Virus record (IMG/VR): IMGVR_UViG_3300020165_000007
Coordinates: 62,001 to 126,000 of that record
DNA length: 64,000 nt
Strand: one strand, 5' to 3'
In this document: one piece after another, positions 9,873-41,598 of the stretch
How the letters are laid out: every line of letters starts with the position of its first letter
Numbering within the stretch: the first letter of the stretch is position 1
The notes under the pieces: model-generated
What the model was told of the DNA's origin: nothing
Database searches by the model: none
Seen by the model: only the letters and a program-made list of their open reading frames with translations
Position numbers and translations under genes: made by a program

Positions 9873-12800
9873 TTAACAAGACGGACATTCTATAATTTTG
9901 AACCCGTAAGCGGTACTGTTAAATAACCCTCCGTAAACTGTTAAAGTATAAATTGATTCTCCCTGAGGTTTTTCAAAAGAGAATACTCGTGAGCCATTTG
10001 AATATCCTCCACAACCCGCATAAGTATCTAGGGGGATTGAAGGGGTCAAGCCGCATGAGCCAGGAGATACATAAACATTACTATTAAGATTAAAATATTC
10101 TAAAGTACCTCCAATTTGACCTTTTGCACCATATCTAGAAACACCATTATCGTCCCATACATTATCATATAATGGATATGTGTAATTACCAGCATCCGAA
10201 TGGTAAGGGAAGTCGGTTACCGTAACAGGTACCGATTGGGTGCTGGTGAACTCTAACTGGTCAGTGTCGTTATTCCACGTAAATACATTACATATATACG
10301 GACTATTCTCAACTCTACTATCAACCAAAGACTCATTAGATGGTTGACCTAACAGTAAACTATCGATAACAACCTCATCTGAGTTATTTTTAACAACAAA
10401 CCGGTCATGAGCACTCTGTGCGTATAATGCGAATTTTACCGTACCCGCACAAGACGATAAATTAAGTGTCGCATTTATAACGGTCTTTGATGTAGAATAT
10501 GATTGTATAGTCCCATCGGGGTTTAAAACATTATTAAAGTTTGAAGTACTAATAGTAAAATTATCAGCACACTGTATAGCTTCAGGTATAGGTGATGACG
10601 TTACCGAAGGTGTTGGAGTAATGGTAGGTGTGATTGATGGTGTGATAGTAGGTGTGATGGTAGGTGTTGGTGTCGGTGTATTTGATGCACAACTTTCACA
10701 TCCTAAGGGGTAAGTTAAAACCTGTCCTACAACGGGACCTAACTGTGTTACGCCAGACCACGGGATTGCTAATTCACTAGGAACAAAGCTAAGATAACAA
10801 TCCCCATTTACTGATAACTCGTCTTGAAAGTCCACAAAATAATAAGTGGCCGATGCGCCGTATTGGGGTATGTAGCTAAAATCTGGTCCCGTTAAGTCGC
10901 CACTCGAATCCCATATAAAATATCCGTTTCCTGTTGTACATCCGGTAAAATAACCCGTCACTGTACACTCTATATCGAATGCATTAGCGGCATCGAAACA
11001 ATTATTTACTCCTCCCTGAAATATATCTTCGTCGTCTAAATAAAAATATGCAACATCTTCCGAAGGTGAAGTTCCGATTACCCTCCACGATAAGGGGTCT
11101 CCAGGGTTGGAATAATTCCAAACAAATACGTCACCATTATTAAGAGATGTGATGGTACCATTAAAAATAACACCCAAAACATACCCATCAGTATCATCAC
11201 TAACTGCTGAACAACACGGAATCACTTCGTAATAAACAATGGGTAGTGGTGGTGAAGAACTTGGAGTCACTGAAGGTGTTACGGTCATAGTTACCGATGG
11301 TGTCATAGTTACTGATGGTGTCATAGTTACTGATGGTGTCACAGTTACTGATGGTGTCACACTAGGTGTAACTGTTGGACATGGTTCACATAGTTGAGGG
11401 TTTAATATTAAGTCAGTACATATATTTTCTAAAAAGTTGTCTGAATTTATTGTAATACTACCGCTTCCACTACCTTGACCTTCAATGAATACAAAACAAT
11501 TTCCTGAATATGAGAATCCATGAAATCCTAAAATAGGTTGGTCTCCCACTACTGTAACAAACAAATCTTCAACTCCACTTGTACAACAAGACTCCGCTCG
11601 ATATAATGAAGTACATGGGTTTGACGCTAAACACGAAGAACAGTTATCAAATCCGGTACTATTGTCTATTGTAAAAGAAGGTGTTAAAGTATTGTCTAAT
11701 ACAAAGTTTATCACAGTATAACATTGTGGTAATATGTTTTGAGTCCCGTCACCACCAAAATAGAAAGTGTCATTTGATTGAGTTATTTGATTAGTAAACT
11801 GAACATGCTCCAAATATGTTTCATTATCGCAACACCCACTTAATAATACTTTATATACAAATTGTGTAGGTGTCGAACTTGGAGTGACTGTGGGGGTAAC
11901 CGTATTAGTTGGTGTTATAGATGGTGTTATAGTTGGTGTTATAGATGGTGTTGGTGTCATTGAAGGTGTAGGTGTTGGTGTAGGAATCTCATCTTCAATA
12001 CATTCTGTACATCCTGAGTATACAGTATCAATACTAAAATTAATGACAGGTTGGTCTATACTGTTAACATCTCCCACATACTCATAGCAATTTTCTTCTT
12101 GAGTGACGTAGTAAATACCATTTAGTGTTGGATTAAGACCTTGAGTATACACCGAAGGACATGTTATTTGTTCTTGAATATATGATTGTAATTCTCCATA
12201 TATTGACAACATTACAAGTAGGTCCAAAGTAGTAAGGACCCCGTCAACTCCACCAAACGTATCACAAAAATATTCAATATTAGTACATGGACTATTAAGA
12301 TAAAAAATGAAACACGCAAACATTGCGGCGTCAGTTATAACACCATTTTCATCCGCTAAAGGTGCCAAATGTGATGGTTCTTGAATTACTGTAGGTATAT
12401 TGTATGTCACACCATCTGCGTTTGTATACGGTACTGTGTCGTAAGGATATGAAACTACGGTACATTGTTCGGAACAACCTGTATATTTTTGTAAACAAGG
12501 ATGATTATTTGTACATGAAGTACAACTTACTGACCCATAATTTTCGGTAATAGTCCCTTGTGAAGGCCCTGTTTGTGCCGACGATGAAAGTATTTTGTAA
12601 CATCCAGAAGTAAAACTACTACTATAAGATGAGTTATTATTAATAAAATAAACGTAGTCATTAACGTTTGCAGATACGTTTAATGTGGTATTTGCAGTAT
12701 AGGTAATTCCATCACAACAACCTTCCAGTGTCAATAGGTTAGTTACGATAGTCCATGAGTCGGGAGTTGTACTTGGTGTGGGTGTAGGTGTTGGCGTTGG

Positions 12801-14204
12801 ACAATCAGGACATAACTGTTCACCACAAATGTTATTAAACACAAAACTGTTTTGACTAATTATAATTGAGGGATTATTTTGATTTTGTTCCATGTAGAGA
12901 AGTCTATAACAGTTACCGTTATAGAAAAATCCAGGGTTAAGGGATAATATAGGTGTAGAATTTAAAAGTAATTGTACCGTTATTTGGTCTCCGCTATTGC
13001 AACAATTTTCAGCTCTAAATAAACTGTTTGTTTGTTCACATGGGTCAAAGTTATTTTGATTATAATTAAAACATTGTAGACATGATAGATGAGTACTCGA
13101 TACTGAGTGTATTACATCACTTGCGTCTAAACCATTCACCCCAAATAAAGTATAACAACCAGGCTCAATCTGAGCGTTTCCATCATACATTATCCCATCA
13201 AAAAATACTATAGTTCCATTTTCAGGTAAATAGTCCATAGCAAAAGTCACTACAGTAACATCATATGGGGGACAACAAGATTTTGCATATGCGGCAAATT
13301 TATCCTCTGGTTGGTCTGAACATAAACTAGTACATATCGAGCTTTGACAGCTTTGAGCTGATGGTCCGTTAAAAATTAATTGTGTTTGTTGACCTGTTAC
13401 CTGTCCATTACTAACCCAACAAGTACCATTATGAGTGACCGCATTACCATTAAATACCCAACCCCCCGTTTGAGTTTCCGTTAATAAAACTCTGGCTAAT
13501 ATAGTATCCTTAGGATTACAACAATTAATCCATTCATGTGTAGTGTATTGGGGAGGTGGAAAAGTATTATTTAAATATTGTGAATCAGAATTTACGTTAA
13601 TTATCGCATTAGCGTCTGAACATACAATGTTTTCAAACTCATAATAACCTTGTTGTAAATCGGAAAAAGGTATACTAAAGGTTAATTCAGTTGAACCTAA
13701 CGACTCTCTGACGGTGATAGATACTGAACCACTTTGAGTGACAGTCGTCCCCACATCATCTTTTAATTTTAAATCAAAAGAGATTGTAGTGTTGACATTA
13801 ACTAATATATTAGAAATTATATTAACGTAAGTGGTGGTTGTTCCTCCACCCGGTCCCGCTTCAAAAACATTATTTACGGTTAAACGAGGTATGACACCGG
13901 ATATAGGGGTTAACGTAGGAGTTGGTGTCGGTGTAAATGACAGTGTCGGTGTCGGAGTAACTAAATTAACACTACCAGTACAAGAACAACTTGTTACGGT
14001 ATCTATTAATTCATATGTGATACATGTCGAACCTGAAGTGCCCGAAAAATTGGTTGTTTCGAAATAATAAGGAAAATTATCAGGATTTATCAATCCTGTG
14101 GCGATTAATTGTTGGGGACTACCCGGTGCACAATCAGAAATATAAAGCGAATAATCACCTGGTTGAGGGTCTGATGGTGTTAAGTTTACTGAGATATAGG
14201 CCAT
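9873..14204 (-). CDS. 1443-aa Cys-rich repeat, Thr/Pro-linker appendage/tail-fibre-like protein
   Basis: About 9 modules CC...G.CY...CxxC...C separated by (TP)n/TPS linkers; N-terminal and Ig-like domains shared with the neighbouring gene; late motif upstream. Confidence 0.7.
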   Translation of the reverse strand: MAYISVNLTPSDPQPGDYSLYISDCAPGSPQQLIATGLINPDNFPYYFETTNFSGTSGSTCITYELIDTVTSCSCTGSVNLVTPTPTLSFTPTPTPTLTPISGVIPRLTVNNVFEAGPGGGTTTTYVNIISNILVNVNTTISFDLKLKDDVGTTVTQSGSVSITVRESLGSTELTFSIPFSDLQQGYYEFENIVCSDANAIINVNSDSQYLNNTFPPPQYTTHEWINCCNPKDTILARVLLTETQTGGWVFNGNAVTHNGTCWVSNGQVTGQQTQLIFNGPSAQSCQSSICTSLCSDQPEDKFAAYAKSCCPPYDVTVVTFAMDYLPENGTIVFFDGIMYDGNAQIEPGCYTLFGVNGLDASDVIHSVSSTHLSCLQCFNYNQNNFDPCEQTNSLFRAENCCNSGDQITVQLLLNSTPILSLNPGFFYNGNCYRLLYMEQNQNNPSIIISQNSFVFNNICGEQLCPDCPTPTPTPTPSTTPDSWTIVTNLLTLEGCCDGITYTANTTLNVSANVNDYVYFINNNSSYSSSFTSGCYKILSSSAQTGPSQGTITENYGSVSCTSCTNNHPCLQKYTGCSEQCTVVSYPYDTVPYTNADGVTYNIPTVIQEPSHLAPLADENGVITDAAMFACFIFYLNSPCTNIEYFCDTFGGVDGVLTTLDLLVMLSIYGELQSYIQEQITCPSVYTQGLNPTLNGIYYVTQEENCYEYVGDVNSIDQPVINFSIDTVYSGCTECIEDEIPTPTPTPSMTPTPSITPTITPSITPTNTVTPTVTPSSTPTQFVYKVLLSGCCDNETYLEHVQFTNQITQSNDTFYFGGDGTQNILPQCYTVINFVLDNTLTPSFTIDNSTGFDNCSSCLASNPCTSLYRAESCCTSGVEDLFVTVVGDQPILGFHGFSYSGNCFVFIEGQGSGSGSITINSDNFLENICTDLILNPQLCEPCPTVTPSVTPSVTVTPSVTMTPSVTMTPSVTMTVTPSVTPSSSPPLPIVYYEVIPCCSAVSDDTDGYVLGVIFNGTITSLNNGDVFVWNYSNPGDPLSWRVIGTSPSEDVAYFYLDDEDIFQGGVNNCFDAANAFDIECTVTGYFTGCTTGNGYFIWDSSGDLTGPDFSYIPQYGASATYYFVDFQDELSVNGDCYLSFVPSELAIPWSGVTQLGPVVGQVLTYPLGCESCASNTPTPTPTITPTITPSITPTITPTPSVTSSPIPEAIQCADNFTISTSNFNNVLNPDGTIQSYSTSKTVINATLNLSSCAGTVKFALYAQSAHDRFVVKNNSDEVVIDSLLLGQPSNESLVDSRVENSPYICNVFTWNNDTDQLEFTSTQSVPVTVTDFPYHSDAGNYTYPLYDNVWDDNGVSRYGAKGQIGGTLEYFNLNSNVYVSPGSCGLTPSIPLDTYAGCGGYSNGSRVFSFEKPQGESIYTLTVYGGLFNSTAYGFKIIECPSC

Positions 14205-14234: not shown

Positions 14235-15737
14235 TTAATTTGTGTTAACATCGCAATTTAATGGAGTTATCGGTGTTTGAGTTGGTGTAACCGATGGGTT
14301 AGGTGTTACGGCTACATCACAACTTAATGGAGTTATTGGTGTTTGAGTTGGTGTAACTGATGGGTTAGGCGTTACGGCTACATCACAACTTAATGGAGTT
14401 ATTGGTGTTTGAGTTGGTGTAACTGATGGGTTAGGTGTTACGGCTACATCACAATCTAAATCGACACACTCAGGGTTAGATGTTGATGGAGTTATTGAGG
14501 GGGTTGTAGTTATTGAGGGAGTCGTTGTTGGTGTTGGTGTCGGACACGCGCAATCACTAGCTTTACATGAATTAAATCTAGGTCCCCATAGGTCACCTAT
14601 GTATGGACTTCCAGACCCTGTACTAAACGGAATATAACAATTACCGTTATAATATATTGCATTACCATTAGTAACCCATCCATTAACTCCGAGGGCTGAT
14701 GCATCAATTTGACCTACCACGTATTGGGGTGAGGTATCTTTACAACAGGCAATAAAACGGTGAGTTTGCCATATAGGGCTATTTTTACCGGTAAAGGTAA
14801 CTGAATTTACTGTGTACGAATCAACCAACTCTCCCGTGGATGAGAAATCTTTAAATTCACTATATGTACCTAATACATCGGTATACGATAAAGAGTTTTC
14901 AGTTATGGTTGCGGTTCCTGAAGTTTGACCTTGATTAATAGTTACTGACACACTAATTTCTACAAAGGTACTATTAGTCCTTTCAAGTCTATTGATAAAG
15001 CTTACTGTAGTATTAGTAGATGCCGCCACATTTGATGTTGCGGTGTAATTACATACTGTTGAACCACTTTCGTAAACAACACCAAAACCAATATTAAAAG
15101 GTATTACTGAAGATGAGGGCGTTACCGATGGAGTCGCGGTTACCGATGGAGTCGCGGTTATCGATGGAGTCGCGGTTACCGATGGAGTTACTGTTATCGA
15201 TGGAGTTGCTGTTATCGATGGAGTTGCTGTTATCGATGGAGTTGCGGTTATCGATGGTGTAGATGTGGGTGAAAGTCCTGGAGTTGCGGTTATCGATGGA
15301 GTTGCTGTTATCGATGGAGTTGCTGTTATCGATGGAGTCGCGGTTATCGATGGAGTTGCTGTTATCGATGGAGTCGCGGTTATCGATGGAGTTGCTGTTA
15401 CCGATGGAGTTGCTGTTATCGATGGTGTAGATGTGGGTGAAAGTCCTGGAGTTGCGGTTATCGATGGTGTTACAGTTACAGTGGGTGTTGGGCTTGGTAA
15501 TAACGTTTGACCACTACAGATTAAACCTGATATAGATTCCGAAACTTTAAAATCATAACAACTTATACTCCCGAACGTTTCGTCTAAATTAACTAAATAA
15601 GGGAAAGAGTCGTAAGTCAACCCTGTAGATATGGTTGTATAAGTGGGAGAAGAGCAATCTTTTAATTCAACTGTAAACGTATTAGTTACTCCAGTTAAAT
15701 TAGTACTTGTTAATAATATTCTAGCGAATGTTGCCAT
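14235..15737 (-). CDS. 500-aa mucin-like (TPSITA repeat) appendage protein with Ig-like and Cys modules
   Basis: N-domain, (TPSITA)n tract, Ig-like domain, CC module and three C-terminal 22-aa repeats. Confidence 0.7.
   Translation of the reverse strand: MATFARILLTSTNLTGVTNTFTVELKDCSSPTYTTISTGLTYDSFPYLVNLDETFGSISCYDFKVSESISGLICSGQTLLPSPTPTVTVTPSITATPGLSPTSTPSITATPSVTATPSITATPSITATPSITATPSITATPSITATPSITATPGLSPTSTPSITATPSITATPSITATPSITVTPSVTATPSITATPSVTATPSVTPSSSVIPFNIGFGVVYESGSTVCNYTATSNVAASTNTTVSFINRLERTNSTFVEISVSVTINQGQTSGTATITENSLSYTDVLGTYSEFKDFSSTGELVDSYTVNSVTFTGKNSPIWQTHRFIACCKDTSPQYVVGQIDASALGVNGWVTNGNAIYYNGNCYIPFSTGSGSPYIGDLWGPRFNSCKASDCACPTPTPTTTPSITTTPSITPSTSNPECVDLDCDVAVTPNPSVTPTQTPITPLSCDVAVTPNPSVTPTQTPITPLSCDVAVTPNPSVTPTQTPITPLNCDVNTN
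14250..14455 (-). repeat. 3 x 66-nt tandem repeat encoding CDVAVTPNPSVTPTQTPITPL(S/N)
   Basis: Near-identical nucleotide units visible at 14260-14455. Confidence 0.85.
15110..15495 (-). repeat. 18-nt tandem repeat array encoding TPS(I/V)TA
   Basis: Repeated gatggagttgc(t/g)gttatc units on the + strand. Confidence 0.9.
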
Positions 15738-15770: not shown

Positions 15771-17027
15771 TTAGTTTATAGTACCCATCTGAAAAAATTT
15801 GTTTTCACCTATTGTTGTTGCACTTAAAGTAGAAAATCCTATTTCATAATGAATTTGAGGATTTAAAGTATTACTATAATTAACTGTTTGTCCTGTAAAG
15901 GGCTCGATATTTAGTTGTTCCGCAACTTTATCAATCCTACAAGCTCTACCAATCGTAAAATATCCGTCAGGACTTCCTGAAGTAGAACCCGCAAAACAAA
16001 GACCTATTATTTTTATTTCTCCATTTATATTTGCTAAAAGAGCGGAACCGGAATCACCTGAATTAATAGGGTAATAACATGAATTACCATTAGTTGTTGT
16101 TGACGCACTAGCAATATATGAAATACACTCGTCATATCTACAAGTAGATTGTGTGGTACTGTTTAATTTATTATTAACATAAACGGTTCCAATCGACAAA
16201 AATCTTAACTTAGTATCCCCCTCTCCTTTAGCTCCTGTCGTTCTACCCACGCTAAAAAAGTCCCATTCATTATTTATTAAGTCATCAATTTCAGATGTTG
16301 TTGCAAATGTAGGTGCTCCCGAAAAACTTAACCCATAATATTTATAAGACTCATTTGAATCAACAACTGACGAATCTAACGTAAATAACGCTCCGTCGAC
16401 GTAATTTATACCACCTAAAGAGTTACTTTTAACCGGTATGTATTTTTTAGTCACACCAACTTGTTGAGAAACTGATGAACTAGGTTGACCCATATCATCC
16501 CCAAATACATTTTCAACACCTCTACTTGGTTGGTTCGCTTCAAAAAATATTTCAGTCATAACATGGGCATTTGTAACCCCAACCAAAGAATCTGTATCTT
16601 TATCTACTGCGATAAATCCCATAGTACCTACCCATGATTTGGTTTGATTTCTAATTTGTAGACCCCCCATTATAGGTCTGATAGTGTTTTGTTGAATCGG
16701 AGTTGTTGCACCTGTCGGATTTAGAACGTTATTCGAGCTCCAAAAATAAAAGTTACTTGGGCAAGCCTCATATGCCGCAAATTCATTAGTTCCTTCTTGA
16801 ACATCGGTTTTTATTACCTCGTCACCTATTTTAATATTTTGTGGTATTATTTCCGCAGAAGTTAGTTCGCTTAATTTCTTTTTTTTCTTAAAACTAAAAA
16901 TTATAGATTTTTCTTTTGTTAATTTTCCGTCCGATTCTTTAAACCCATAACTAATAGATGTGCAATCTTCAGAGGAATTATCCGCTAATTCTTTTATTTT
17001 GTCTTTAATTTTTTGTGTGTATGACAT
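15771..17027 (-). CDS. Trypsin-like (S1, NAL1-like) serine protease
   Basis: Catalytic triad motifs GVTNAHV (His), VDGAL (Asp), SGDSGS (Ser), plus GTMG and IIGLCFAGS; N-terminal K...TDVQE pro-domain-like region. Confidence 0.8.
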   Translation of the reverse strand: MSYTQKIKDKIKELADNSSEDCTSISYGFKESDGKLTKEKSIIFSFKKKKKLSELTSAEIIPQNIKIGDEVIKTDVQEGTNEFAAYEACPSNFYFWSSNNVLNPTGATTPIQQNTIRPIMGGLQIRNQTKSWVGTMGFIAVDKDTDSLVGVTNAHVMTEIFFEANQPSRGVENVFGDDMGQPSSSVSQQVGVTKKYIPVKSNSLGGINYVDGALFTLDSSVVDSNESYKYYGLSFSGAPTFATTSEIDDLINNEWDFFSVGRTTGAKGEGDTKLRFLSIGTVYVNNKLNSTTQSTCRYDECISYIASASTTTNGNSCYYPINSGDSGSALLANINGEIKIIGLCFAGSTSGSPDGYFTIGRACRIDKVAEQLNIEPFTGQTVNYSNTLNPQIHYEIGFSTLSATTIGENKFFQMGTIN

Positions 17028-27072: not shown

Positions 27073-27073
27073 T

Positions 27074-27673: not shown

Positions 27674-27679
27674 AAAATT

Positions 27680-30685: not shown

Positions 30686-30687
30686 AA

Positions 30688-33198: not shown

Positions 33199-33850
33199 TT
33201 TAAATAATATAACTTTAGTTGCCCTAACAAGTGTTAGGTTAGAACAAACCATAAAGGCGTTACAACACAGTTCTTTAAAAATTAACTTCGGTGACATAAA
33301 ATTATTAAGCGATATTAAACCTGATAATTTACCTGATAATATAACACATGAGTATGTACCTAAATGTAATAATATAGATGAGTGGAATTATCATATAATT
33401 TATACTTTACCAAAATATATAGAAACCGACTATATCATTTTAATACACGATAATGGGTTTATTGTAAATCCTGAAGTGTGGACTGATGAATTTTTAAAAT
33501 ATGATTATATCGGGGCGCCATGGCCATTACCTAAAGATGATTTTTCATATAGAGATATAAATGGAGAAGTTATTAGACAAGGAAATAGTGTATCTCTAAG
33601 AAGTAAAAAATTATTAGATGTTGCGAACAAATTAGATTTAGAATGGAAAGCCTTTCATGGTTTTACAAATGAAGACGGATTTATATGTGTTAATTATCGT
33701 CATGAATATATAAATGAAGGTTGTGTTTTTGCACCTATCGATATATCCTGTTTATTTTCTAAAGAAACTGAGTTACCTGAAAATCGCGGAATTAATACGT
33801 TTGCCTTTCACAACTATAATGGAGAAAACAGAAAATACCCTAAATTTTAA
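33191..33850 (+). CDS. DUF5672-like putative glycosyltransferase
   Basis: LIHDNGFIVNPEVW...YDYIGAPW...GNSVSLRSKKLL...NEDGF...FAFH. Confidence 0.7.
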   Translation: MLDLNNITLVALTSVRLEQTIKALQHSSLKINFGDIKLLSDIKPDNLPDNITHEYVPKCNNIDEWNYHIIYTLPKYIETDYIILIHDNGFIVNPEVWTDEFLKYDYIGAPWPLPKDDFSYRDINGEVIRQGNSVSLRSKKLLDVANKLDLEWKAFHGFTNEDGFICVNYRHEYINEGCVFAPIDISCLFSKETELPENRGINTFAFHNYNGENRKYPKF

Positions 33851-33854
33851 AATA

Positions 33855-34044
33855 ATGAAAGATAATAACTACAGGGGCTAAATTAATAATCACCGATTTT
33901 AATCATTTACCCGAAAACCCCAAAGATTTTTGGACGGATGAATATACCGATAACTATATAGTATATGATAAGGCACATAGATTTAATGAAACTAATAAAA
34001 TAGTCCATAAAGAAAATTTAGGGTCAAATATATATGATAAATGA
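33855..34044 (+). pseudogene. Frameshifted, truncated remnant of a DUF3431-like gene
   Basis: ATG at 33855 is one base out of frame with the open frame 33859-34044 (KIITTGAKLIITDFNHLPENPKDFWTDEYTDNYIVYDKAHRF...ENLGSNIYDK*), which stops at the next ATG. Confidence 0.5.
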
Positions 34045-34721
34045 GTACTAAAGAAATTGTAATAGCGGCTTACGATAAAGAATTAGATTGGATAACCCAA
34101 TTTGATTCTGATATTAAACAAACAATATACAGAAAAGGTATTGAAACTGATAATGAAAATGAAATATTTATTGAGAATAATATGGGTAGATGTGTACATT
34201 CATTTTTTTATCACATTTATAAAAATTATGATAATTTATCAGACATAACGTTCTTTGTACAAGATTATCCATTTGACCACTGGGAAGATTTAATTGAAGT
34301 AATTAATAATGAAACTTGGGTTGATAGGTGTGCTTTAGAAATCGAGGGTTATTATGGTTTCCATTGGAATTCTATAAAAGTTCCATCACCAAAAGGGGGT
34401 ATTATGCACTCCCTTAAACCAACAACACATCATGGTAATGGTAACATTATTAGTTGTAACTCAAATGGTAGCCCACAAGACCGAAACCCATTAATAAATG
34501 TTGATAAATATTGGGAATTATTATTTGAAGGGATACCACCACCTATATATGAATTCATACCAGGTGGACATTTCGGCATAACAAAAGAATATACCCATCT
34601 AAGGTCTCGTGAATTTTATGGTAAAATATGTAATTTATTAACTGAAGATATATGGGCACCATGGATGATAGAACGTTTAGAGTGTTACATATTCAACCCA
34701 AAATATAAAACAAAATTATGA
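34041..34721 (+). CDS. DUF3431-like protein (glycan-locus associated)
   Basis: IVIAAYDKELDW...IYRKG...NMGR...HIYKNYDNLSDITFFVQDYPFDH...FIPGGHF...PWMIER. Confidence 0.7.
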   Translation: MSTKEIVIAAYDKELDWITQFDSDIKQTIYRKGIETDNENEIFIENNMGRCVHSFFYHIYKNYDNLSDITFFVQDYPFDHWEDLIEVINNETWVDRCALEIEGYYGFHWNSIKVPSPKGGIMHSLKPTTHHGNGNIISCNSNGSPQDRNPLINVDKYWELLFEGIPPPIYEFIPGGHFGITKEYTHLRSREFYGKICNLLTEDIWAPWMIERLECYIFNPKYKTKL

Positions 34722-35641
34722 TAACGACAAATTTAACTGGAAATCTAGGGAACCACATGTGGCAATATGCGGTATGTAGAACAATAGCTGAGAAACTAGG
34801 GTATGAGTGGGGTATAAACCCATCGCCAAGTCATGATTACTTTAAAGGGCAATCACAAATGACATTTATGAATGTTGATTTTGGTAAACCTGTAGAAGGT
34901 ATTATACATGAATATCATGAATCTTGGAAAGAAATATCTCACGTAGATAAAGTTAATATAACAATGTTAAATCCCTCATTATATGAGATACAAGATAATA
35001 CTATATTAGTCGGAGATAAGAGTATTAACCCAGGAGCGATAGGTGGTATATATCAGTCAGAAGAATATATAATTAATAGAAAGTCAGATATTAGAGAATG
35101 GTTTAAGATTAAAAACGAGTCAAAAAAAAATTATGATAAAATATTATCTGATAAGGGTATTGTTCTTGATGAAAATCTTTGTGTTATTAATTTCAGAGGT
35201 GGGGAGTATAGGTCGATACCAAATGTATTATTAAGAAGGGAATATTGGAGGGATTCAATTAACCACATGTTAATAATAAACCCTAATATGAAATTTGTGA
35301 TTATAACAGATGACCCAAACACCGCAAATAAGTTTATGCCCTTTCCAATCGAATCAATTCATGTTGATGTTGGATTTGATTTTTACGTTGTCAATCAAGC
35401 TAAATGGAATATAATATCCAATTCAACATTTGGTTGGTGGGCAGCATGGCTTAATGACAAAACAAATAAAATAATAGCTCCTAAGTATTGGGCTAGACAT
35501 AATGTTAGTGATGGGTATTGGGCCACAGGAGATTCGTACACCATAGGGTTTACATATATGGATAGGGAAGGAAATTTATATGATTATGAAACTTGTAAAA
35601 AAGAGGCAGAAATTTACTATAAACAAAAAAATATAATTTAA
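34718..35641 (+). CDS. GT11 (alpha-1,2-fucosyltransferase-like) glycosyltransferase
   Basis: GNLGNHMWQYA, GIYQSEEY, INFRGGEY, ITDDP, NSTFGWWAAWL. Confidence 0.85.
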   Translation: MITTNLTGNLGNHMWQYAVCRTIAEKLGYEWGINPSPSHDYFKGQSQMTFMNVDFGKPVEGIIHEYHESWKEISHVDKVNITMLNPSLYEIQDNTILVGDKSINPGAIGGIYQSEEYIINRKSDIREWFKIKNESKKNYDKILSDKGIVLDENLCVINFRGGEYRSIPNVLLRREYWRDSINHMLIINPNMKFVIITDDPNTANKFMPFPIESIHVDVGFDFYVVNQAKWNIISNSTFGWWAAWLNDKTNKIIAPKYWARHNVSDGYWATGDSYTIGFTYMDREGNLYDYETCKKEAEIYYKQKNII

Positions 35642-35642
35642 T

Positions 35643-36380
35643 ATGAGTTATACAGAGATACCAAACGAGGAGTTAGAAATTTTTAAAAGATTAAGTAATA
35701 AATTCAAAGTTGTTTTTGATGTAGGTTGCAGAGATGATATTGATTATTTTAAGATTAATGATTTATGTGAATATCACTTATTTGAACCAAATACAATAGC
35801 GATAAATTCTTTAAATGAAAAATTAGGTAAGTTAGAAAATCATAATATAAAATTAAATGAATTTGGTTTATCTGATACAACACAAGATAATTGTGTTTAT
35901 TATAAAAACGTTGAATCTTTTACGATAAATCCATTTGCTAGAACAATAGATTCTGGTGATAGATTCTCTTTAAAAAAATTAGATGATTATATCTCAGAAA
36001 ATAATATTGAAAAAATTGACTTTATAAAAATAGATGTTGAAGGGTTGGATTATAAAGTTATTTTAGGTGGTTTAGAGGCTATTAAAAATAAAAATATTGT
36101 GTCATTCATTCAAATAGAATATAATGGTGGCGTTAAACAATACGTTGATTTGCTTGATAATTTTGAGTTTTATTGGATGATGGAACCAAGATTATTATCA
36201 GCTGTTAATAATATGGGTAATAAAAATGATTTTAACAAATCATTAATTAGACTTGATATTGACATAATTAATTTTATTGATAATACCGTATCCCCAACTG
36301 GTAATGGTGGTAATATTTTTGGTGTTAATAAAAAAAATGTTGACTTTGATGTTGATAAAATAATATTTAAAATAATTTAA
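35643..36380 (+). CDS. FkbM-family SAM-dependent methyltransferase
   Basis: VVFDVG, HLFEPN, FGLSD, KLDDY...IDFIKIDVEG...VILG...IQIEY. Confidence 0.85.
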   Translation: MSYTEIPNEELEIFKRLSNKFKVVFDVGCRDDIDYFKINDLCEYHLFEPNTIAINSLNEKLGKLENHNIKLNEFGLSDTTQDNCVYYKNVESFTINPFARTIDSGDRFSLKKLDDYISENNIEKIDFIKIDVEGLDYKVILGGLEAIKNKNIVSFIQIEYNGGVKQYVDLLDNFEFYWMMEPRLLSAVNNMGNKNDFNKSLIRLDIDIINFIDNTVSPTGNGGNIFGVNKKNVDFDVDKIIFKII

Positions 36381-36381
36381 T

Positions 36382-37242
36382 ATGCGAAAAATTTATGATT
36401 GTTTTAATTTTTTTAATGAATTAGATTTATTAGAAATAAGGTTAAATACACTATATGATATAGTTGATTATTTCGTAATCATCGAATCAAACTTAACTCA
36501 CTCTGGTGAGGTTAAACCATTTTATTATGAGGATAATAAAAGTAGATTTGAAAAATTTTCAGATAAAATTATACATTATAAGGTGTTAGATACTCCAGAA
36601 CAATTTAATAATTTACATAATGGTGATGATGAAATACTAAATCAAATCTATCATTATATAAATAAACAAACTAATAGGTTTAATAGAAACACACAGCCCG
36701 ATTATGGTAGAGACTTCTTTCAAAAGGAATGTGTTAGAAGACCCTTAACAAATTGTTCTGATGATGATATAATTATTATTTCTGACTTGGATGAAATACC
36801 GAACCCTAAAATACTAAGTAATGTACACGAATTAAATCTATCTGAAAATATATATCGGTTAAATCAAAATATGTATTGTTATTATTTAAATGTGTTTAAG
36901 GAGAAAAATTGGTTTGGTAGTAGAATTCTTAATTATGGTAAACTTAAAAATCTATCAATAAATGAGGTTAGAGGTGATAATACACTTAGTGTTGAATTAC
37001 CAAATGGTGGTTGGCACTTCAGTTTTATGGGAGGAAAAGAAATGGTAAAAAAGAAAATAACATCTTATTCTGCACGAGATTTAGGAGGTAGACATGTTTT
37101 AAACTCTATTGAATCAAATATGGACAAGAATATTGACCCCTTTTTTAGGGGTAGTCTTAATGTTGTTGAAATTGATGATACTTACCCTAAGTATTTGATT
37201 AATAACCTTAAAAGGTATGGTCACCTCATAAAAAAAATATGA
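36382..37242 (+). CDS. GT17 (beta-1,4-GlcNAc-transferase, MGAT3-like) glycosyltransferase
   Basis: IYDCFNFFNELDLLEIRL...FVIIESNLTHSG.VKP...FQKE...ISDLDEIP...GGWHFSFMGG. Confidence 0.85.
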   Translation: MRKIYDCFNFFNELDLLEIRLNTLYDIVDYFVIIESNLTHSGEVKPFYYEDNKSRFEKFSDKIIHYKVLDTPEQFNNLHNGDDEILNQIYHYINKQTNRFNRNTQPDYGRDFFQKECVRRPLTNCSDDDIIIISDLDEIPNPKILSNVHELNLSENIYRLNQNMYCYYLNVFKEKNWFGSRILNYGKLKNLSINEVRGDNTLSVELPNGGWHFSFMGGKEMVKKKITSYSARDLGGRHVLNSIESNMDKNIDPFFRGSLNVVEIDDTYPKYLINNLKRYGHLIKKI

Positions 37243-38015
37243 TAACTTGCAAATTACAGGGAGGATTAGGAAATCAAATGTTCCAAATATCTGCAACTAT
37301 TGGTCACGCTCTGAGGTATGGTTTTAATTATGGTTTTGATTTTAACCGTTGTTATACTCCTAATCAGGGTCATAAATCATCCACATATTCAAATAACTTT
37401 TTTAGAGACATTAACGAAAGAATCGACTTATCAGACTTATCTAAATATAATTTATTTAATGAGAGAGGGTTTTCGTATCAGGAAATACCAAATAAAGATA
37501 ATATTATTTTATCGGGTTACTTTCAAAGTGAAAAATATTTTAATAATGTTAAATCCGTAATTAAAGACCTTTTTTATTTCGATGAACAAATAAAAAATAA
37601 CGTTAATAAATTATTAAACTCAATTAATGAAGAAAAATGTGCGATTCATATTAGAAGAGGTGATTATGTAAATAAACCTGATTTTCATTTAGTTTGTGAT
37701 AATACGTACTATCAAAAAGCTATCGATTTTATTGGTTCAGACAAACATTTCATTGTGGTATCGGATGATATAGAATGGTGTAAAGACAATATAAAGTCAG
37801 ATAATATAACTTTTACTCCATTTAAAGACGAAATAAGTGATTTATATTTAATGACACAATGCGAACATAAAATAATGTCTAATAGTTCTTTTAGTTGGTG
37901 GGGAGTGTGGTTATCAAAAAAAAGTGGGGTTGTGGTTTCCCCAAATAAGTGGTTTAATTATAATGGGCCGCAAGATTTTAACGATATATATTTAGATTCT
38001 TGGGTTAAAATATAA
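37239..38015 (+). CDS. GT11 (alpha-1,2-fucosyltransferase-like) glycosyltransferase
   Basis: GGLGNQMFQ, GYFQSEKYF, IHIRRGDY, VSDDIEWC, NSSFSWWG. Confidence 0.9.
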   Translation: MITCKLQGGLGNQMFQISATIGHALRYGFNYGFDFNRCYTPNQGHKSSTYSNNFFRDINERIDLSDLSKYNLFNERGFSYQEIPNKDNIILSGYFQSEKYFNNVKSVIKDLFYFDEQIKNNVNKLLNSINEEKCAIHIRRGDYVNKPDFHLVCDNTYYQKAIDFIGSDKHFIVVSDDIEWCKDNIKSDNITFTPFKDEISDLYLMTQCEHKIMSNSSFSWWGVWLSKKSGVVVSPNKWFNYNGPQDFNDIYLDSWVKI

Positions 38016-38772: not shown

Positions 38773-38773
38773 A

Positions 38774-39425: not shown

Positions 39426-39695
39426 ATGTTGGAAATTTTAGGAGAAATGTATTACATAGATTTAAATGAATTAAGTGATACTATTGATATGTCCATCCCT
39501 ACAATAAGTGGTGAAACTGAACAAACTATAAACTTAGTTTCATTTGAAGTTTTAAAGATGATGCTTGAGGTTATAATGACTGAACGTGAGGAAGTTGACG
39601 AAAATTTAGGCATCCACTCGGTTAAAAATTTAAGTATTCCCTTTAAAATTGCATTTAATACATTATTAAAACATCAAATACTAAAACATTTATAA
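39426..39695 (+). CDS. Hypothetical protein
   Basis: 89-aa ORF in operon. Confidence 0.7.
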   Translation: MLEILGEMYYIDLNELSDTIDMSIPTISGETEQTINLVSFEVLKMMLEVIMTEREEVDENLGIHSVKNLSIPFKIAFNTLLKHQILKHL

Positions 39696-39697
39696 AA

Positions 39698-40762
39698 ATG
39701 AATGAAGAAACGTTACTAAAAGTAGAAAAGTCTATCGAGAACTTACGTGATAAGTCCTCTAGAATTTATTTTATGGTTCAGGATACTAAAGGTAATCCTA
39801 AGGCCGGTGTTAGGATGTCATATCAAATGGCTCAAACATTAAAAGAAGAAGGTTATAATACCTTTATTATGCATGAAAAAAATGATTACACCGGTGTATC
39901 ATCATGGATGGGTGAAAAATATATGGAAATCACACACTCATCAATAGAAAATCAAAATTTACAGATATCACCTGAAGATTTTATAATAATACCTGAAGTA
40001 TATGGTCATGTTATGGAACAGGTGTCAAAAATGACATGTGCTAAAATTGTCTTATGTCAAGCTTATGACCATATGTTAGAGACATTACAGGCTGGAACAT
40101 CTTGGTCCCAATACGGATTTTTAAAATGTATCACAACAAGTGAAACTCAAAAAAAATACATTTCAGAAATAATGAAAAATATATCTTTCGATATAATTAA
40201 ACCACTTATTACTGAAGAATTTACCCCTAAAACATTACCATCTAAACCAATCGTTTCTATCCACACAAGAGACCAGAGGGACACTATGAAAATAATAAAA
40301 ACTTTTTATTTAAAATACCCTCAATATAGATGGATTACTTTTAGAGATATGAGAAGTTTAGATACTAAAGAATTCGCCGAATATTTAAAAGACGCGTTTG
40401 TATCAGTATGGGTTGACGATATTTCAGGTTTCGGTACATACCCTATTGAATCAATGGCAAGCAATACTCCTGTAATTGGAAAAGTCCCAAATATGAAACC
40501 GGAATGGTTAAACGATAATAATGGTATATGGACATATGAGTTAAATAACATTCATGATATACTTGCTGAATATATACAGAATTGGTTAGAAGATAATGTT
40601 AATATTGAATTGTACGATAATGGAATTGAAACTTCTAATGAATACAAAAATCAGGATTCCTTTAAATCTTCAGTTATTGAATTATTTGAGGGTTACTTTA
40701 ACTCTCGTAGAGAAATTTTTGAGGTTCAATTAGAAAAAATAAAAGTAGAAGAAGAAAATTAA
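39698..40762 (+). CDS. Glycosyltransferase, GT-B fold
   Basis: IIIPEVY...VLCQAY...VWVDDISGFGTYPIESMASNTPVIG. Confidence 0.75.
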   Translation: MNEETLLKVEKSIENLRDKSSRIYFMVQDTKGNPKAGVRMSYQMAQTLKEEGYNTFIMHEKNDYTGVSSWMGEKYMEITHSSIENQNLQISPEDFIIIPEVYGHVMEQVSKMTCAKIVLCQAYDHMLETLQAGTSWSQYGFLKCITTSETQKKYISEIMKNISFDIIKPLITEEFTPKTLPSKPIVSIHTRDQRDTMKIIKTFYLKYPQYRWITFRDMRSLDTKEFAEYLKDAFVSVWVDDISGFGTYPIESMASNTPVIGKVPNMKPEWLNDNNGIWTYELNNIHDILAEYIQNWLEDNVNIELYDNGIETSNEYKNQDSFKSSVIELFEGYFNSRREIFEVQLEKIKVEEEN

Positions 40763-40767
40763 TTAAA

Positions 40768-41598
40768 ATGGAAAAATTAAATATATCAGTGGTTTTACCT
40801 GTAGAATCTTCTAAACATAAAAATTTTACAGACCTATTTAAATCTTGTATTGTTTCAGTACAACAACAAATTAAAGAATCTGTAAGAGGTGAAAATGTTA
40901 TAGATGATATTGAGTTGGTTATAATCCATTCAGGAGAAGAGAGTTTAGTAGAATTAATTAATAATTCAGACTTTAGTGGGTTAACTACTAATATCATTCA
41001 TAATGAAGGAGATACGGACTTTAGTACTCAAGTTAATTTAGGTATTGAAAAGTCGTCTCACGACTGGGTAACAATATTAGAATTTGATGATGAGGTATCG
41101 AGCATATGGTTTAGGAACGTTTATAAATATATTAACGCATACCCACACATAAAAGGGTTTTTACCTATCGTTGTTGATACTGACGAAAATGACACGTTTG
41201 CAGGATTTACTAATGAAGCTACATTCGCGGCTAACATGAATAGTGAAATTGGAATACTAACCAACGAAGTACTACTAAACTATCAGAATTTCCAAACGAG
41301 TGGTATGGTTTTTAAAAAATCAATATTTGATGACTTTGGTGGTTTTAAGAAATCCTTTAAGTTAACCTTTGTATATGAACTATTATTAAGGTTGACTTAT
41401 AACTCTGTAGAAATAATGACTATACCTAGAATTGGGTATAAACACTCCAATATGAGGGAGGGGTCAATTTTTTGGAACTATAAAAATGGAGAATATCCAT
41501 TAACTCAAGAAGAAGTTTCTTTTTGGATTGAATCAGCAAAAAAAGAACATTTCTTTAAAGATGATAGAGATATAAAATATGAAGTGATTGATATTTAA
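40768..41598 (+). CDS. GT2-like glycosyltransferase
   Basis: ISVVLPV...QVNLGIEKSSHDWVTILEFDDEV...FKKS...YELLLRL. Confidence 0.8.
   Translation: MEKLNISVVLPVESSKHKNFTDLFKSCIVSVQQQIKESVRGENVIDDIELVIIHSGEESLVELINNSDFSGLTTNIIHNEGDTDFSTQVNLGIEKSSHDWVTILEFDDEVSSIWFRNVYKYINAYPHIKGFLPIVVDTDENDTFAGFTNEATFAANMNSEIGILTNEVLLNYQNFQTSGMVFKKSIFDDFGGFKKSFKLTFVYELLLRLTYNSVEIMTIPRIGYKHSNMREGSIFWNYKNGEYPLTQEEVSFWIESAKKEHFFKDDRDIKYEVIDI

What the first reader, a model, noticed from the sequence alone, without database searches (positions are those of the whole stretch)
11270..41598. Candidate phage 'glycocalyx' system: mucin-like virion appendages plus a dedicated multi-glycosyltransferase pathway
Seen: three adjacent late genes carry long Thr/Pro/Ser tracts (~280 aa of TPS(I/V)T(A/S/T/P) at 18.9-19.8 kb; ~125 aa at 15.1-15.5 kb; several shorter in the 1443-aa protein). 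About 3 kb beyond this operon starts a locus with GT4-like, GT2 (x3 plus a fusion), GT11 (x2), GT17, GT-B, DUF5672, DUF3431, FkbM and sugar-modifying enzymes, with no flippase, polymerase or signal peptides noticed, so it looks cytoplasmic. Known: TPS/PT tracts are typical O-glycosylation substrates; streptococcal serine-rich-repeat adhesins are glycosylated in the cytoplasm by clustered GT4/GT2/GT8 enzymes; some mycobacteriophages and giant viruses glycosylate their virions; the Bacteroidota host O-glycosylation system is periplasmic and uses a D(S/T)x motif, so it is unlikely to serve here. Inference: the phage builds elongated, fucose/dideoxyhexose-capped, methylated O-glycans on stiff mucin-like stalks that display LamG, peptidase and Cys-module heads, for adhesion, shielding or buoyancy.
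Basis: partly seen in the sequence, partly recalled or inferred. Interest (0 to 1): 0.85.

Follow-up and report, generated by a model that had tools for sequence, protein, structure and literature searches.

The report
Jumbo phage glycan island and fibres
A 270-kb T4-like water phage carries, side by side, a swappable set of fibre proteins joined by long Thr/Pro/Ser linkers and a large sugar-building gene set that its whole clade shares. The two vary independently among relatives, so the sugars are probably not made specifically for those linkers.

Summary
Three adjacent genes carry Thr/Pro/Ser (TPS) tracts of 314, 145 and 33-61 aa. About 2.6 kb away lie 14 Pfam-supported glycan genes, none with membrane-spanning segments.

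The window matches part of a 270,383-bp IMG/VR contig of a T4-like jumbo phage, probably of the freshwater "moraphage" lineage (Bacteroidota hosts).

Comparison with about 90 related loci changes the interpretation.
- **TPS genes:** they form a hypervariable cassette between a conserved 640-aa protein and PolB. TPS tracts link interchangeable modules to conserved anchors. One module is homologous to a cyanomyovirus baseplate protein, which supports a virion appendage.
- **Glycan genes:** four glycosyltransferases (GTs) are conserved in every relative. They flank an island of 0 to at least 18 genes (606 proteins, 257 families, mostly sugar-nucleotide enzymes, GTs and methyltransferases).
- **Co-occurrence:** TPS content and island size do not co-vary (rho -0.26, n=15). 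Ten relatives with no TPS at this locus keep islands of up to 18 genes. Three relatives with at least 125 TPS residues have 0-1 island genes.

Best reading: a clade-wide cytoplasmic glycan system acts on a conserved acceptor, most likely virion proteins. TPS stalks are at most opportunistic acceptors. Host-envelope remodelling remains a serious rival.

The parts
9873..14204 (-). 1443-aa Cys-rich (4.5% Cys) modular protein. Six globular modules are separated by five TPS linkers of 33-61 aa. It has its own upstream TATTTATA motif.
   Evidence: No Pfam hit for any module. No homolog of its modules in the fetched relatives.
14235..15737 (-). 500-aa protein: an N-terminal domain of about 75 aa, a 145-aa TPS tract, a Cys-containing module, and a 3x 22-aa C-terminal repeat.
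   Evidence: The N-terminal domain recurs in cassette proteins of four relatives.
15771..17027 (-). 418-aa trypsin-like serine protease, a separate gene inside the cassette.
   Evidence: Pfam Trypsin 20.5 bits, against a cut-off of 20.6. PHROG 20754 'protease', E 1e-17. Homologs lie beside the 640-aa protein (p640) in three relatives.
17055..20606 (-). 1183-aa protein built from the following parts:
- N-terminal anchor domain (aa 1-130)
- a small module
- 314-aa TPS stalk (aa 265-578)
- widespread central domain (aa about 560-872)
- a 61-aa TPS linker
- C-terminal LamG-like module (aa 935-1183)
18875..19816 (-). DNA that encodes the main (TPS[IV]T[ATSP])n tract. It is a diverged tandem array with periods of 18, 36 and 90 nt.
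   Evidence: Several metagenome contigs end inside this repeat. The antisense ORF 18931-19770 is a by-product of the repeat.
20609..22531 (-). 640-aa Cys-rich protein (p640), conserved across the clade. It is the first gene of the cassette operon and an alternative anchor: in some relatives the TPS stalk and head modules are fused to its C-terminus.
   Evidence: The AF2 model (pLDDT 62, pTM 0.73) gives weak Foldseek matches to lectin-like jelly-roll binding modules. No Pfam, PHROG or PDB sequence hit.
9518..9871 (-). 117-aa protein (p117), a paralog (about 33% identity) of the N-terminal anchor domain of the 1183-aa protein. It is conserved in all relatives, next to PolB.
25163..26374 (+). Core GT 1 (called GTB1 here): a 403-aa GT-B type glycosyltransferase, present in all relatives at 62-79% identity.
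28108..29970 (+). Core GT 2 (called GT2_5 here): a 620-aa protein with an N-terminal Glyco_tranf_2_5 domain. The unassigned C-terminal 400 aa varies in length and sequence among relatives (380-842 aa in all).
29972..38015 (+). Hypervariable glycan island. In this phage it holds 10 genes: GT2, RfbH-like DegT, RmlD-like, GT2, DUF5672, DUF3431, GT11, FkbM, GT17, GT11.
   Evidence: It is replaced by other gene sets, or absent, in relatives.
39698..40762 (+). Core GT 3 (called GTB2 here): 354 aa, related to the Agt/AmGGT family.
40768..41598 (+). Core GT 4 (called GT2c here): 276 aa, GT2 family.
26371..28108 (+). Conserved non-glycan genes interleaved with the core GTs: PolB-type exonuclease, dUTPase and HAD phosphatase. 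PhoH (38065-38772) and an NT5C-like gene (38774-39421) are interleaved in the same way.

Best explanation
Two neighbouring modules of a moraphage-like T4-type jumbo phage each vary on their own.

**Module 1 (9.9-22.5 kb).** This is a recombination-prone cassette of virion appendage proteins.
- Conserved anchors (the 640-aa protein, and a 130-aa N-domain that also exists as the stand-alone 117-aa paralog) carry interchangeable head modules. These are a baseplate-protein-like central domain, a LamG-like domain and Cys-rich modules.
- The heads sit on proline-stiffened Thr/Pro/Ser linkers. The longest linker (314 aa) could span up to about 100 nm if fully extended.

**Module 2 (25.2-41.6 kb).** This is a clade-wide, membrane-free and therefore cytoplasmic glycan-building system.
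- Four conserved GTs presumably start and extend a glycan on an acceptor common to the whole clade.
- A swappable island of sugar-nucleotide enzymes, GTs and methyltransferases gives each strain a different outer glycan.
- The acceptor is most likely one or more phage-made virion proteins.
- In this phage the TPS stalks may also be glycosylated, but they are not what the system exists for.

**Shown:** the anatomy, the conservation pattern and the lack of co-variation.
**Inferred:** the virion location, the cytoplasmic site, and the acceptor.
For: **Core plus island.**
- The same synteny appears in about 90 loci. GTB1, GT2_5, GTB2 and GT2c are always present. The island holds 0 to at least 18 genes.
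- The 606 distinct island proteins fall into 257 families.
- Pfam on 100 family representatives is dominated by epimerase/dehydratase, GDP-mannose dehydratase, RmlD, DegT, FkbM, GT2, GT11, UDP-glucose dehydrogenase, acetyltransferase and cytidylyltransferase.
- A relative with 98% identical flanks carries a different island.

**No membrane step.** No protein with two or more hydrophobic segments occurs among the island proteins, and none in the window locus.

**Protein-glycan hint.** The GTB2 profile matches only AmGGT (8xsg, E 4.5e-13). Its Agt homologs elongate peptide-linked glucans.

**Conserved acceptor argument.** Core GTs at 50-79% identity across phages whose other proteins diverge to 30-50% argue for an acceptor carried by the phage itself. 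This is inference.

**Cassette.**
- The region between p640 and PolB ranges from nothing, to a 130-aa N-domain only, to 1.0-1.5-kaa non-TPS proteins, to TPS proteins with up to 796 TPS residues.
- Head modules are fused to p640 in some relatives and to the N-domain protein in others.
- The central domain is homologous to a domain of S-RIM2 'baseplate wedge subunit' SWTG_00062, which lies between gp9-like and gp8-like genes.
- TATTTAT[ACT] sits 12-29 nt upstream of 15 ORFs, against 0.7 expected. These include all four cassette transcription units and the portal and neighbouring head genes. None occurs in 23.4-42.3 kb.
- Cys content is 3-4.5% in p640, the 500-aa and the 1443-aa proteins, against about 0.5-1% elsewhere.

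**No TPS-GT co-variation.** rho -0.26, p 0.36, n=15.
Against: - No data show any glycan on any protein.
- The GT genes sit among replication and nucleotide-metabolism genes and lack the promoter-like motif of the structural genes.
- No initiating protein GT (for example GT41/NGT-like, or GtfA-like) was recognised.
- AmGGT itself acts on free oligosaccharides rather than glycopeptides.
- Similar GT11/GT2/epimerase clusters in T4-like cyanophages are usually read as host cell-wall modification.
- The promoter-like motif also precedes non-structural genes (the SOD fusion, a DUF3721 protein), so 'late' is not proven.
- Only 20-40 kb per relative was seen. TPS proteins could exist elsewhere in relatives that look TPS-free.
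Confidence: 0.42

Rival explanations
1. The GT locus is a pathway dedicated to building O-glycans on the TPS tracts. This would turn the appendages into mucin-like, glycan-coated stalks.
For: - The two loci lie 2.6 kb apart.
- The TPS tracts are 53% Ser+Thr, and host periplasmic O-glycosylation cannot reach them because there is no signal peptide. There is no D[ST]x motif inside the tracts.
- The GTs are soluble.
- GTB2 is related to a family that includes glycopeptide-elongating Agt enzymes.
- TPS tracts occur in a majority of the relatives examined.
Against: - The four core GTs and large islands persist in 10 relatives whose complete cassette region has zero TPS residues, with islands up to 18 genes.
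- Relatives with 125-573 TPS residues have 0-1 island genes.
- Spearman rho is -0.26.
- Only 12 of 79 database proteins that share the central domain have TPS tracts. The cyanophage homolog has none.
- TPS tracts sit between every pair of modules, as ordinary Pro/Thr linkers do, and such linkers are extended without sugar (general knowledge of PT linkers).
Confidence: 0.2
2. Host-envelope remodelling. The phage GTs and sugar-nucleotide enzymes act during infection on host lipid-linked LPS, capsule or glycoprotein precursors and rely on host initiation, flipping and ligation. The aim would be to block superinfection or to stop progeny readsorbing to debris. Island diversity would then mirror host glycan serotypes. 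The TPS tracts would be plain linkers.
For: - The gene content resembles O-antigen and capsule loci.
- The nearest NCBIfam models are polysaccharide GTs such as TuaG, EpsE, PglI and WcaA, all well below their cut-offs.
- This is the usual interpretation of the comparable clusters in P-SSM2, S-SCSM1 and S-SCSM2R and of GTs in huge phages.
- The genes sit in a non-structural region without the motif shared by structural genes.
Against: - No phosphoglycosyl transferase, flippase, polymerase, ligase or any multi-pass membrane protein occurs among 606 island proteins from about 80 loci.
- Four GTs are strongly conserved across a clade whose hosts presumably differ in surface glycans. That fits a phage-borne acceptor better (inference).
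Confidence: 0.26
3. DNA hypermodification. The GTs glycosylate modified bases of the phage genome to evade restriction, and the island diversifies the DNA-linked glycan.
For: - The GTs are interleaved with an exonuclease, dUTPase, HAD phosphatase, PhoH and an NT5C-like nucleotidase.
- Phage GTs that put diverse glycans on DNA are documented (the paper found).
- GTB1 has homologs in a 4-GT cluster next to the DNA polymerase in Phapecoctavirus.
Against: - Pfam gave no hit to the T4 alpha- or beta-glucosyltransferase families, and the window holds no hydroxymethylase, TET-type or other base-hydroxylating gene.
- The list of genes shared by more than 80% of moraphages contains none either.
- Ten or more GTs plus deoxy/amino-sugar and O-methylation enzymes far exceed known DNA-glycan systems (general knowledge).
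- dUTPase suggests ordinary thymidine DNA.
Confidence: 0.06

Closest known systems
Glycan ('LPS / cell-wall modification') gene clusters of T4-like cyanomyoviruses (P-SSM2, S-SCSM1, S-SCSM2R)
   Same: They are aquatic T4-like myoviruses. Their clusters hold GT2, GT11 and GT1-type transferases with NDP-sugar epimerases and lack export machinery. The clusters are variable and have no experimentally known target. This phage also shares a baseplate-protein domain with cyanomyoviruses.
   Different: Here four GTs are fixed across a large clade and flank a single replaceable island. The host is probably Bacteroidota. The published interpretation for the cyanophages is host surface modification.
Mycobacteriophage virion O-glycosylation (Freeman et al. 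2023, as cited in PMC12619734)
   Same: Phage-encoded soluble GTs modify phage structural proteins in the cytoplasm. This is the only experimentally established case of glycosylated tailed-phage virions that I know of.
   Different: Those phages use one to a few GTs located in the structural operon. Their acceptors are the C-termini of capsid and tail-tube subunits. Here there are 14 glycan genes outside the structural operon, the MCP has no TPS tract, and there is no experimental evidence.
Giant-virus glycosylation machineries (chlorovirus capsid glycans; Megavirinae fibril glycans). From my own knowledge, not tested here.
   Same: Virus-encoded, ER/Golgi-independent GTs work with enzymes for rare amino/deoxy sugars and methyltransferases. 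Gene clusters are clade-specific. The glycans coat capsid proteins or fibrils. Families such as GT17, DUF3431 and DUF5672, seen here, are more typical of eukaryotes and their viruses than of phages.
   Different: Those viruses infect eukaryotes.
Actinobacillus/Haemophilus cytoplasmic N-glycosylation (NGT + Agt) of adhesins
   Same: GTB2 is a detectable relative (E 4.5e-13) of AmGGT, whose Agt homologs elongate glucose chains on adhesin peptides in the cytoplasm.
   Different: No NGT (GT41) homolog was found in the window. AmGGT itself prefers free oligosaccharides. The acceptor-defining residues were not compared.
Streptococcal serine-rich-repeat adhesin glycosylation (GtfA/GtfB + accessory Sec)
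   Same: Both involve cytoplasmic O-glycosylation of long hydroxy-amino-acid repeats of a fibrillar adhesin by clustered GTs.
   Different: There is no GtfA/GtfB-type hit and no accessory Sec. The repeats here are Thr/Pro-rich hexapeptides, not Ser-rich dipeptide repeats. The resemblance is in concept only.
Pro/Thr ('PT box') linkers of secreted multidomain glycoside hydrolases
   Same: The composition and the position between globular modules match, with variable length and an extended conformation.
   Different: Those linkers are glycosylated, where they are, by host secretory-pathway enzymes. Here the proteins have no signal peptide.
'Moraphages' (Arch Virol 2025, PMC12619734)
   Same: They have 200-307-kb genomes, mainly from freshwater, with predicted Bacteroidota hosts. 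They share T4-like structural genes, PolB, PhoH and dUTPase. Four core orthogroups are putative GTs, and variable genomic islands were noted.
   Different: Membership of this contig was not tested phylogenetically. The paper does not describe the glycan island or the TPS cassette.

Membership tests
Pfam glycosyltransferase and sugar-modifying families | Score above the curated Pfam gathering threshold | tested here: met
   Above the cut-off: Glyco_tranf_2_5 100 bits; GT2 62, 53 and 30 bits; GT11 34 and 129 bits; GT17 95 bits; DUF5672 38 bits; DUF3431 43 bits; FkbM 41 bits; DegT 243 bits; RmlD_sub_bind 64 bits.
GT-B (GT4-like) glycosyltransferases, for genes 25163 and 39698 | Score above the Pfam threshold for Glycos_transf_1 or Glyco_trans_1_4 | tested here: not met
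   Scores are 18.7 against 27 bits and 24.0 against 26.4 bits. Indirect support: 25163 matches phage genes annotated as glycosyltransferase at E 1e-20 to 1e-22, and the 39698 profile matches the solved GT 8xsg at E 4.5e-13.
Wzx/Wzy- or ABC-dependent surface-polysaccharide locus | Initiating phosphoglycosyl transferase, flippase or ABC transporter, and polymerase or ligase (all multi-pass membrane proteins) | tested here: not met
   Hydropathy scans found no ORF with two or more hydrophobic 19-mers in 25163-41598 or among 606 island proteins of relatives. No such Pfam family appeared.
T-even type DNA glucosylation | T4 alpha/beta-glucosyltransferase family, plus a pathway that makes a hydroxylated base | tested here: not met
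   No such Pfam hit in any window ORF scanned. The other 206 kb of the genome could not be examined.
Mycobacteriophage-type virion O-glycosylation | GT genes inside the structural operon; acceptors are C-terminal extensions of the major capsid and tail-tube proteins | tested here: not met
   The GT genes lie among replication and nucleotide genes on the opposite strand from the head genes. The MCP (50195-51991) has no TPS tract. The tail tube gene is not in the window.
Mycobacteriophage-type virion O-glycosylation | Glycan demonstrated on virion proteins | not testable with these tools
   This needs virions.
NGT/Agt cytoplasmic protein glycosylation | Agt-family elongating glucosyltransferase | tested here: met
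   A profile of 28 GTB2 orthologs matches AmGGT (8xsg) at E 4.5e-13 over 246 positions. The family description comes from PMC12159676.
NGT/Agt cytoplasmic protein glycosylation | HMW1C-like N-glycosyltransferase (GT41) that primes Asn | tested here: not met
   No GT41 or TPR-GT hit in the window.
Serine-rich-repeat adhesin system (GtfA/B + aSec) | GtfA/GtfB pair, SecA2/SecY2 export, and Ser-rich dipeptide repeats | tested here: not met
   No such families were found and there are no membrane proteins. The repeat unit is TPS[IV]T[ATSP].
LamG / ConA-like lectin fold (C-terminal module of the 1183-aa protein) | Match to Laminin_G models | tested here: inconclusive
   The window copy gives no hit even at E<=5. 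Three of 30 homologs at 54-82% identity hit Laminin_G_3, best E 1.4e-5. No profile hit to PDB.
T4-like (Gp23/Gp20) myovirus | Gp23-type major capsid protein, Gp20-type portal and T4-type large terminase | tested here: met
   Pfam Gp23 E 4e-73, Portal_T4 E 9e-79, Terminase_6N E 6e-9.
Moraphage lineage | 200-307-kb genome, T4-like structural genes, PolB, PhoH, dUTPase, and four core GT orthogroups | tested here: met
   The contig is 270,383 bp. The genes were found. Four GTs are conserved in all relatives. The paper's features were read.
Moraphage lineage | Phylogenetic placement with the published genomes | not tested

The most novel reading that the evidence does not exclude
An abundant clade of aquatic jumbo phages carries a 'serotype' locus of its own. 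A conserved four-GT core plus an island as replaceable as a bacterial O-antigen locus coats virion proteins with a strain-specific glycan made entirely in the host cytoplasm. In phages such as this one, the acceptors would include 100-nm Thr/Pro/Ser stalks. The coat could act as a shield, or as a glycan bait for the polysaccharide-binding surface proteins of Bacteroidota hosts.
Probability: 0.3. Interest if true: 0.85.

Novelty: new variant of a known kind. Interest (0 to 1): 0.55.

Why it matters
Phage-encoded glycan clusters are usually listed as auxiliary metabolic genes and left there. This clade offers a clean natural experiment. Four GTs are fixed over hundreds of metagenomic contigs, and they bracket one island that is swapped even between phages with 98% identical flanks. 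That pattern is the signature of diversifying selection on a glycan structure.

If the acceptor is the virion, tailed phages of Gram-negative aquatic bacteria would have variable glycan coats. This would bear on adsorption, on grazing and particle attachment, and on how virion 'serotypes' evolve.

If the acceptor is the host envelope, the locus is a large toolkit for superinfection exclusion.

Either way, the specific claim that mucin-like stalks and the GT locus form one system should not be carried forward without genome-wide and biochemical tests.

The fibre cassette also exposes a widespread, confidently folded domain with no structural relative.

Tried and rejected
**Searches on the cassette proteins that found nothing.**
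- Pfam on whole TPS proteins and on ten excised modules at E<=5 gave nothing credible.
- PHROGs hit only low-complexity 'unknown function' families.
- PDB sequence and profile searches for the 1183-aa pieces, p640, the N-domain/p117 family, GTB1, the GT2_5 fusion and the C-terminal module gave no hits.
- PHROGs on the N-domain family and Pfam on the p640 family gave nothing.

**Structure predictions.**
- The central domain folds with high confidence (pLDDT 87.5), yet Foldseek against PDB and BFVD found no match.
- The p640 model has moderate confidence, with only weak jelly-roll matches (TM 0.2-0.35). I use it only as a hint.

**Other searches.**
- hhalign of the C-terminal module against p640 showed no relation.
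- Megablast of 25 kb against cultured phages found no match. p640 and GTB2 have no tblastn hit in cultured phages.
- The genome-contig scan with the RfbH-like gene, meant to find a host, returned only three MAG contigs of mixed taxonomy and was uninformative.
- Cluster names for database homologs are all 'hypothetical'.
- A literature search on Phapecoctavirus GT function found nothing relevant. The Freeman 2023 paper is not held.

**Ideas considered and rejected.**
- TATAAATA as a T4-type late promoter: the element that is enriched by position is TATTTAT[ACT] in sense orientation.
- The 651-aa protein downstream as a membrane GT-C or Wzy: it has only three weak hydrophobic helices in a helical C-terminal third, more like a tape-measure or hub protein.
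- The 250-aa protein as part of the glycan system: by eye it resembles a gp55-type sigma factor (untested).

**Not attempted.** I did not walk whole relatives' contigs, because that would have used more scans than the caps allow.

Full report
**1. Observation**

The TPS tracts are real and striking.
- The 1183-aa ORF (17055-20606, minus strand) has a 314-aa tract at aa 265-578, window about 18875-19816. It holds 40 TPS[IV]T units and is 34% Thr, 19% Ser and 19% Pro. Two shorter tracts are also present.
- The 500-aa ORF (14235-15737, minus) has a 145-aa tract plus two shorter ones.
- The 1443-aa ORF (9873-14204, minus) has five tracts of 33-61 aa.
- The DNA is a diverged tandem array with periods of 18, 36 and 90 nt.
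- No other ORF in the window has such a tract.

The glycan genes are also real. On the plus strand lie:
- a weak GT-B (25163)
- a 620-aa Glyco_tranf_2_5 fusion (28108)
- GT2 (29972)
- an RfbH-like DegT enzyme (30688)
- an RmlD-like reductase (31830)
- GT2 (32500)
- DUF5672 (33191)
- DUF3431 (34041)
- GT11 (34718)
- FkbM (35643)
- GT17 (36382)
- GT11 (37239)
- a second GT-B (39698)
- GT2 (40768)

An exonuclease, dUTPase, HAD phosphatase, PhoH and an NT5C-like gene are interleaved with them. None of these proteins has membrane-spanning segments.

**2. What genome this is**

- The window encodes a Gp23-type capsid protein, a Gp20-type portal, a T4-type terminase and a PolB.
- It is identical over the fetched loci to IMGVR_UViG_3300020165_000007, a 270,383-bp contig.
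- The nearest cultured capsid proteins are only 35-45% identical: Flavobacterium phage immuto, Microcystis phage Mel-JY01 and Rhodothermus phage RM378.
- The features match the recently named 'moraphages': 200-307 kb, mostly freshwater, predicted Bacteroidota hosts, T4-like structural genes, PhoH, dUTPase and PolB. That paper reports four core orthogroups of putative GTs and unexplored variable islands. I did not test membership by phylogeny.

**3. The TPS genes are a hypervariable fibre cassette**

I fetched 27 loci around the 640-aa protein (p640) and 32 around the first GT-B.
- In all of them the backbone is p640, then a variable region, then a 117-aa protein (p117), then PolB.
- The variable region takes four forms: nothing; a 130-aa protein equal to the N-terminus of the 1183-aa protein; large proteins without TPS tracts (689-1456 aa); or TPS proteins with up to 796 TPS residues.
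- The 130-aa N-domain is a paralog of p117.
- The central and C-terminal modules of the 1183-aa protein are fused to the p640 homolog in two relatives, while the N-domain stands alone there.
- TPS tracts therefore act as linkers that join interchangeable modules to two alternative conserved anchors.
- Several metagenome contigs end inside the repeat.

**4. Evidence that the cassette proteins are virion appendages**

- The central domain (aa about 560-872) has more than 200 database homologs at 53-95% identity. Their partner domains differ: subtilase, Laminin_G_3, fn3, He_PIG and lipase. Only 12 of 79 carry TPS tracts.
- The same domain matches 86 cultured cyanomyoviruses at 42-44% identity (E 1e-58 to 1e-63). 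In S-RIM2 it lies in the 1713-aa 'baseplate wedge subunit' between gp9-like and gp8-like genes.
- The C-terminal module always sits at the C-terminus of its homologs. Three of 30 close homologs reach Laminin_G_3.
- p640, the 500-aa protein and the 1443-aa protein have 3-4.5% Cys and no signal peptide. This suits proteins that end up outside the cell after lysis.
- A motif TATTTAT[ACT] lies 12-29 nt upstream of 15 ORFs, against 0.7 expected. These include all four cassette transcription units, the portal and neighbouring head genes, but no gene between 23.4 and 42.3 kb. The motif also precedes a few non-structural genes, so it marks a shared promoter class rather than proving 'late'.

**5. The glycan genes are a clade-wide core plus a replaceable island**

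Eighty loci were fetched around PhoH, and these were only the best 80 of more than 600 matches. Together with the GT-B-anchored loci they show one synteny:
- p640, DUF3721 protein, three small proteins, GTB1, exonuclease, dUTPase, (HAD), GT2_5
- then the island
- then PhoH, NT5C-like, GTB2, GT2c, a 250-aa protein, a 123-aa protein and three large proteins

The four GTs outside the island are present everywhere at 50-79% identity.

The island ranges from 0 to at least 18 genes.
- Its 606 distinct proteins form 257 families, and none has two or more hydrophobic segments.
- Pfam on 100 family representatives finds mostly NDP-sugar epimerases/dehydratases, GDP-mannose dehydratase, RmlD, DegT, FkbM and other methyltransferases, GT2, GT11, UDP-glucose dehydrogenase, acetyltransferases and cytidylyltransferases.
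- A relative whose flanking genes are 94-98% identical has a different island.

**6.

I merged overlapping loci into 93 superloci. For 34 of them I tabulated TPS residues between p640 and PolB against island size.
- With complete islands (n=15), Spearman rho is -0.26 (p 0.36).
- Ten relatives with a fully visible cassette region have zero TPS residues yet keep the core GTs, with islands up to 18 genes.
- Three relatives with 125-573 TPS residues have 0-1 island genes.
- The caveat is that only 20-40 kb of each relative was visible.

**7. What the glycan is put on**

This part is inference.
- The absence of any initiating phosphoglycosyl transferase, flippase or polymerase in about 80 islands argues against autonomous synthesis of a surface polymer.
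- Strong conservation of four GTs across a clade whose other proteins diverge to 30-50% identity suggests an acceptor that travels with the phage.
- GTB2's only solved relative is AmGGT. Its Agt homologs elongate peptide-linked glucans in a cytoplasmic protein-glycosylation system, although AmGGT itself uses free oligosaccharides.
- No DNA-glucosyltransferase family and no base-hydroxylating gene is in the window or in the published moraphage core list.

My ranking is:

| Acceptor | Confidence |
|---|---|
| Virion protein glycosylation not tied to TPS | 0.42 |
| Host-envelope remodelling | 0.26 |
| DNA | 0.06 |
| Other targets | remainder |

**8. Comparison with known systems**

- The closest known kind is the GT11/GT2/epimerase cluster of T4-like cyanomyoviruses, whose target is unknown and usually assumed to be the host surface.
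- Mycobacteriophage virion glycosylation is the only proven tailed-phage precedent. It differs in gene number, gene position and acceptor.
- Giant-virus glycan machineries are the best functional analogy (from my own knowledge, untested here).
- The serine-rich-repeat adhesin system is similar in concept only.
- New here are the fixed four-GT core bracketing one island as variable as an O-antigen locus in an abundant clade, and the adjacent TPS-linked fibre cassette. The functional link between the two is not supported.

**9. Limits**

No experiment is available and no cultured relative carries the core GTs or p640. The anchors and most modules have no assignable family. Gene temporal classes are inferred from a motif only.

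Noticed in passing
window 17991-18929 (-), aa about 560-872 of the 1183-aa protein: This is a widespread domain, with more than 200 homologs at 53-95% identity. It is also found in cyanomyovirus baseplate-module proteins. It has an invariant EExxEHxxHTxH cluster. AF2 gives a confident model (pLDDT 87.5, pTM 0.87), but Foldseek finds no match in PDB or BFVD. It may be a new, probably metal-binding, virion enzyme or adaptor fold.
   Followed up: partly
window 9518-9871 (-) and 20202-20606 (-): The conserved 117-aa protein next to PolB is a paralog (about 33% identity) of the N-terminal anchor domain of the 1183-aa protein. Neither has a Pfam, PHROG or PDB relative.
   Followed up: partly
window, 15 sites (for example 22565-22572, 17040-17047, 15751-15758, 14217-14224, 56493-56500): The promoter-like element TATTTAT[ACT] lies 12-29 nt upstream of start codons, against 0.7 such sites expected by chance. 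It resembles a reversed T4 late box. It is absent from 23.4-42.3 kb.
   Followed up: partly
window 41598-42350 (+): A 250-aa protein conserved next to the last core GT has a region that looks like sigma-factor region 2 (AYSYFGTICKNYL). It may be a gp55-type late sigma factor. This is judged by eye only.
   Followed up: no
window 42754-44709 (+): A 651-aa fast-evolving protein has a hydrophobic, helical C-terminal third. It is a candidate tape-measure or hub protein, a class the moraphage paper could not find.
   Followed up: no
window 3648-5207 (+): A 519-aa protein carries a complete Fe/Mn superoxide dismutase (aa 44-233) fused to an unassigned C-terminal half of about 285 aa. It is conserved in relatives at 48-65% identity and is preceded by the promoter-like motif.
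   Followed up: no
window 25163-26374 (+); L140 (NC_052662.1 45046-48190): The first core GT has 26-28% identical homologs, two per genome, in a four-GT cluster near the DNA polymerase of Phapecoctavirus coliphages. It also has a 36% homolog in a 735-kb huge phage. The function of those clusters appears to be undescribed.
   Followed up: partly
L002, L003, L007, L022 (contig ends): Four independent metagenome contigs stop inside the TPS-encoding repeat. This suggests either assembly breaks or population heterogeneity in repeat length.
   Followed up: no
L141 (JACQLK010000018.1): A 44-kb contig binned as a 'Pacearchaeota' MAG carries a 73% identical copy of the RfbH-like gene next to an RmlD-like gene. 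This points to either recent transfer or a mis-binned contig.
   Followed up: no
window 14248-14454 (-): The 500-aa protein ends in three near-identical 22-aa units (CDVAVTPNPSVTPTQTPITPLS), each containing a Cys. The DNA is a 66-nt tandem repeat with 95% matches.
   Followed up: no
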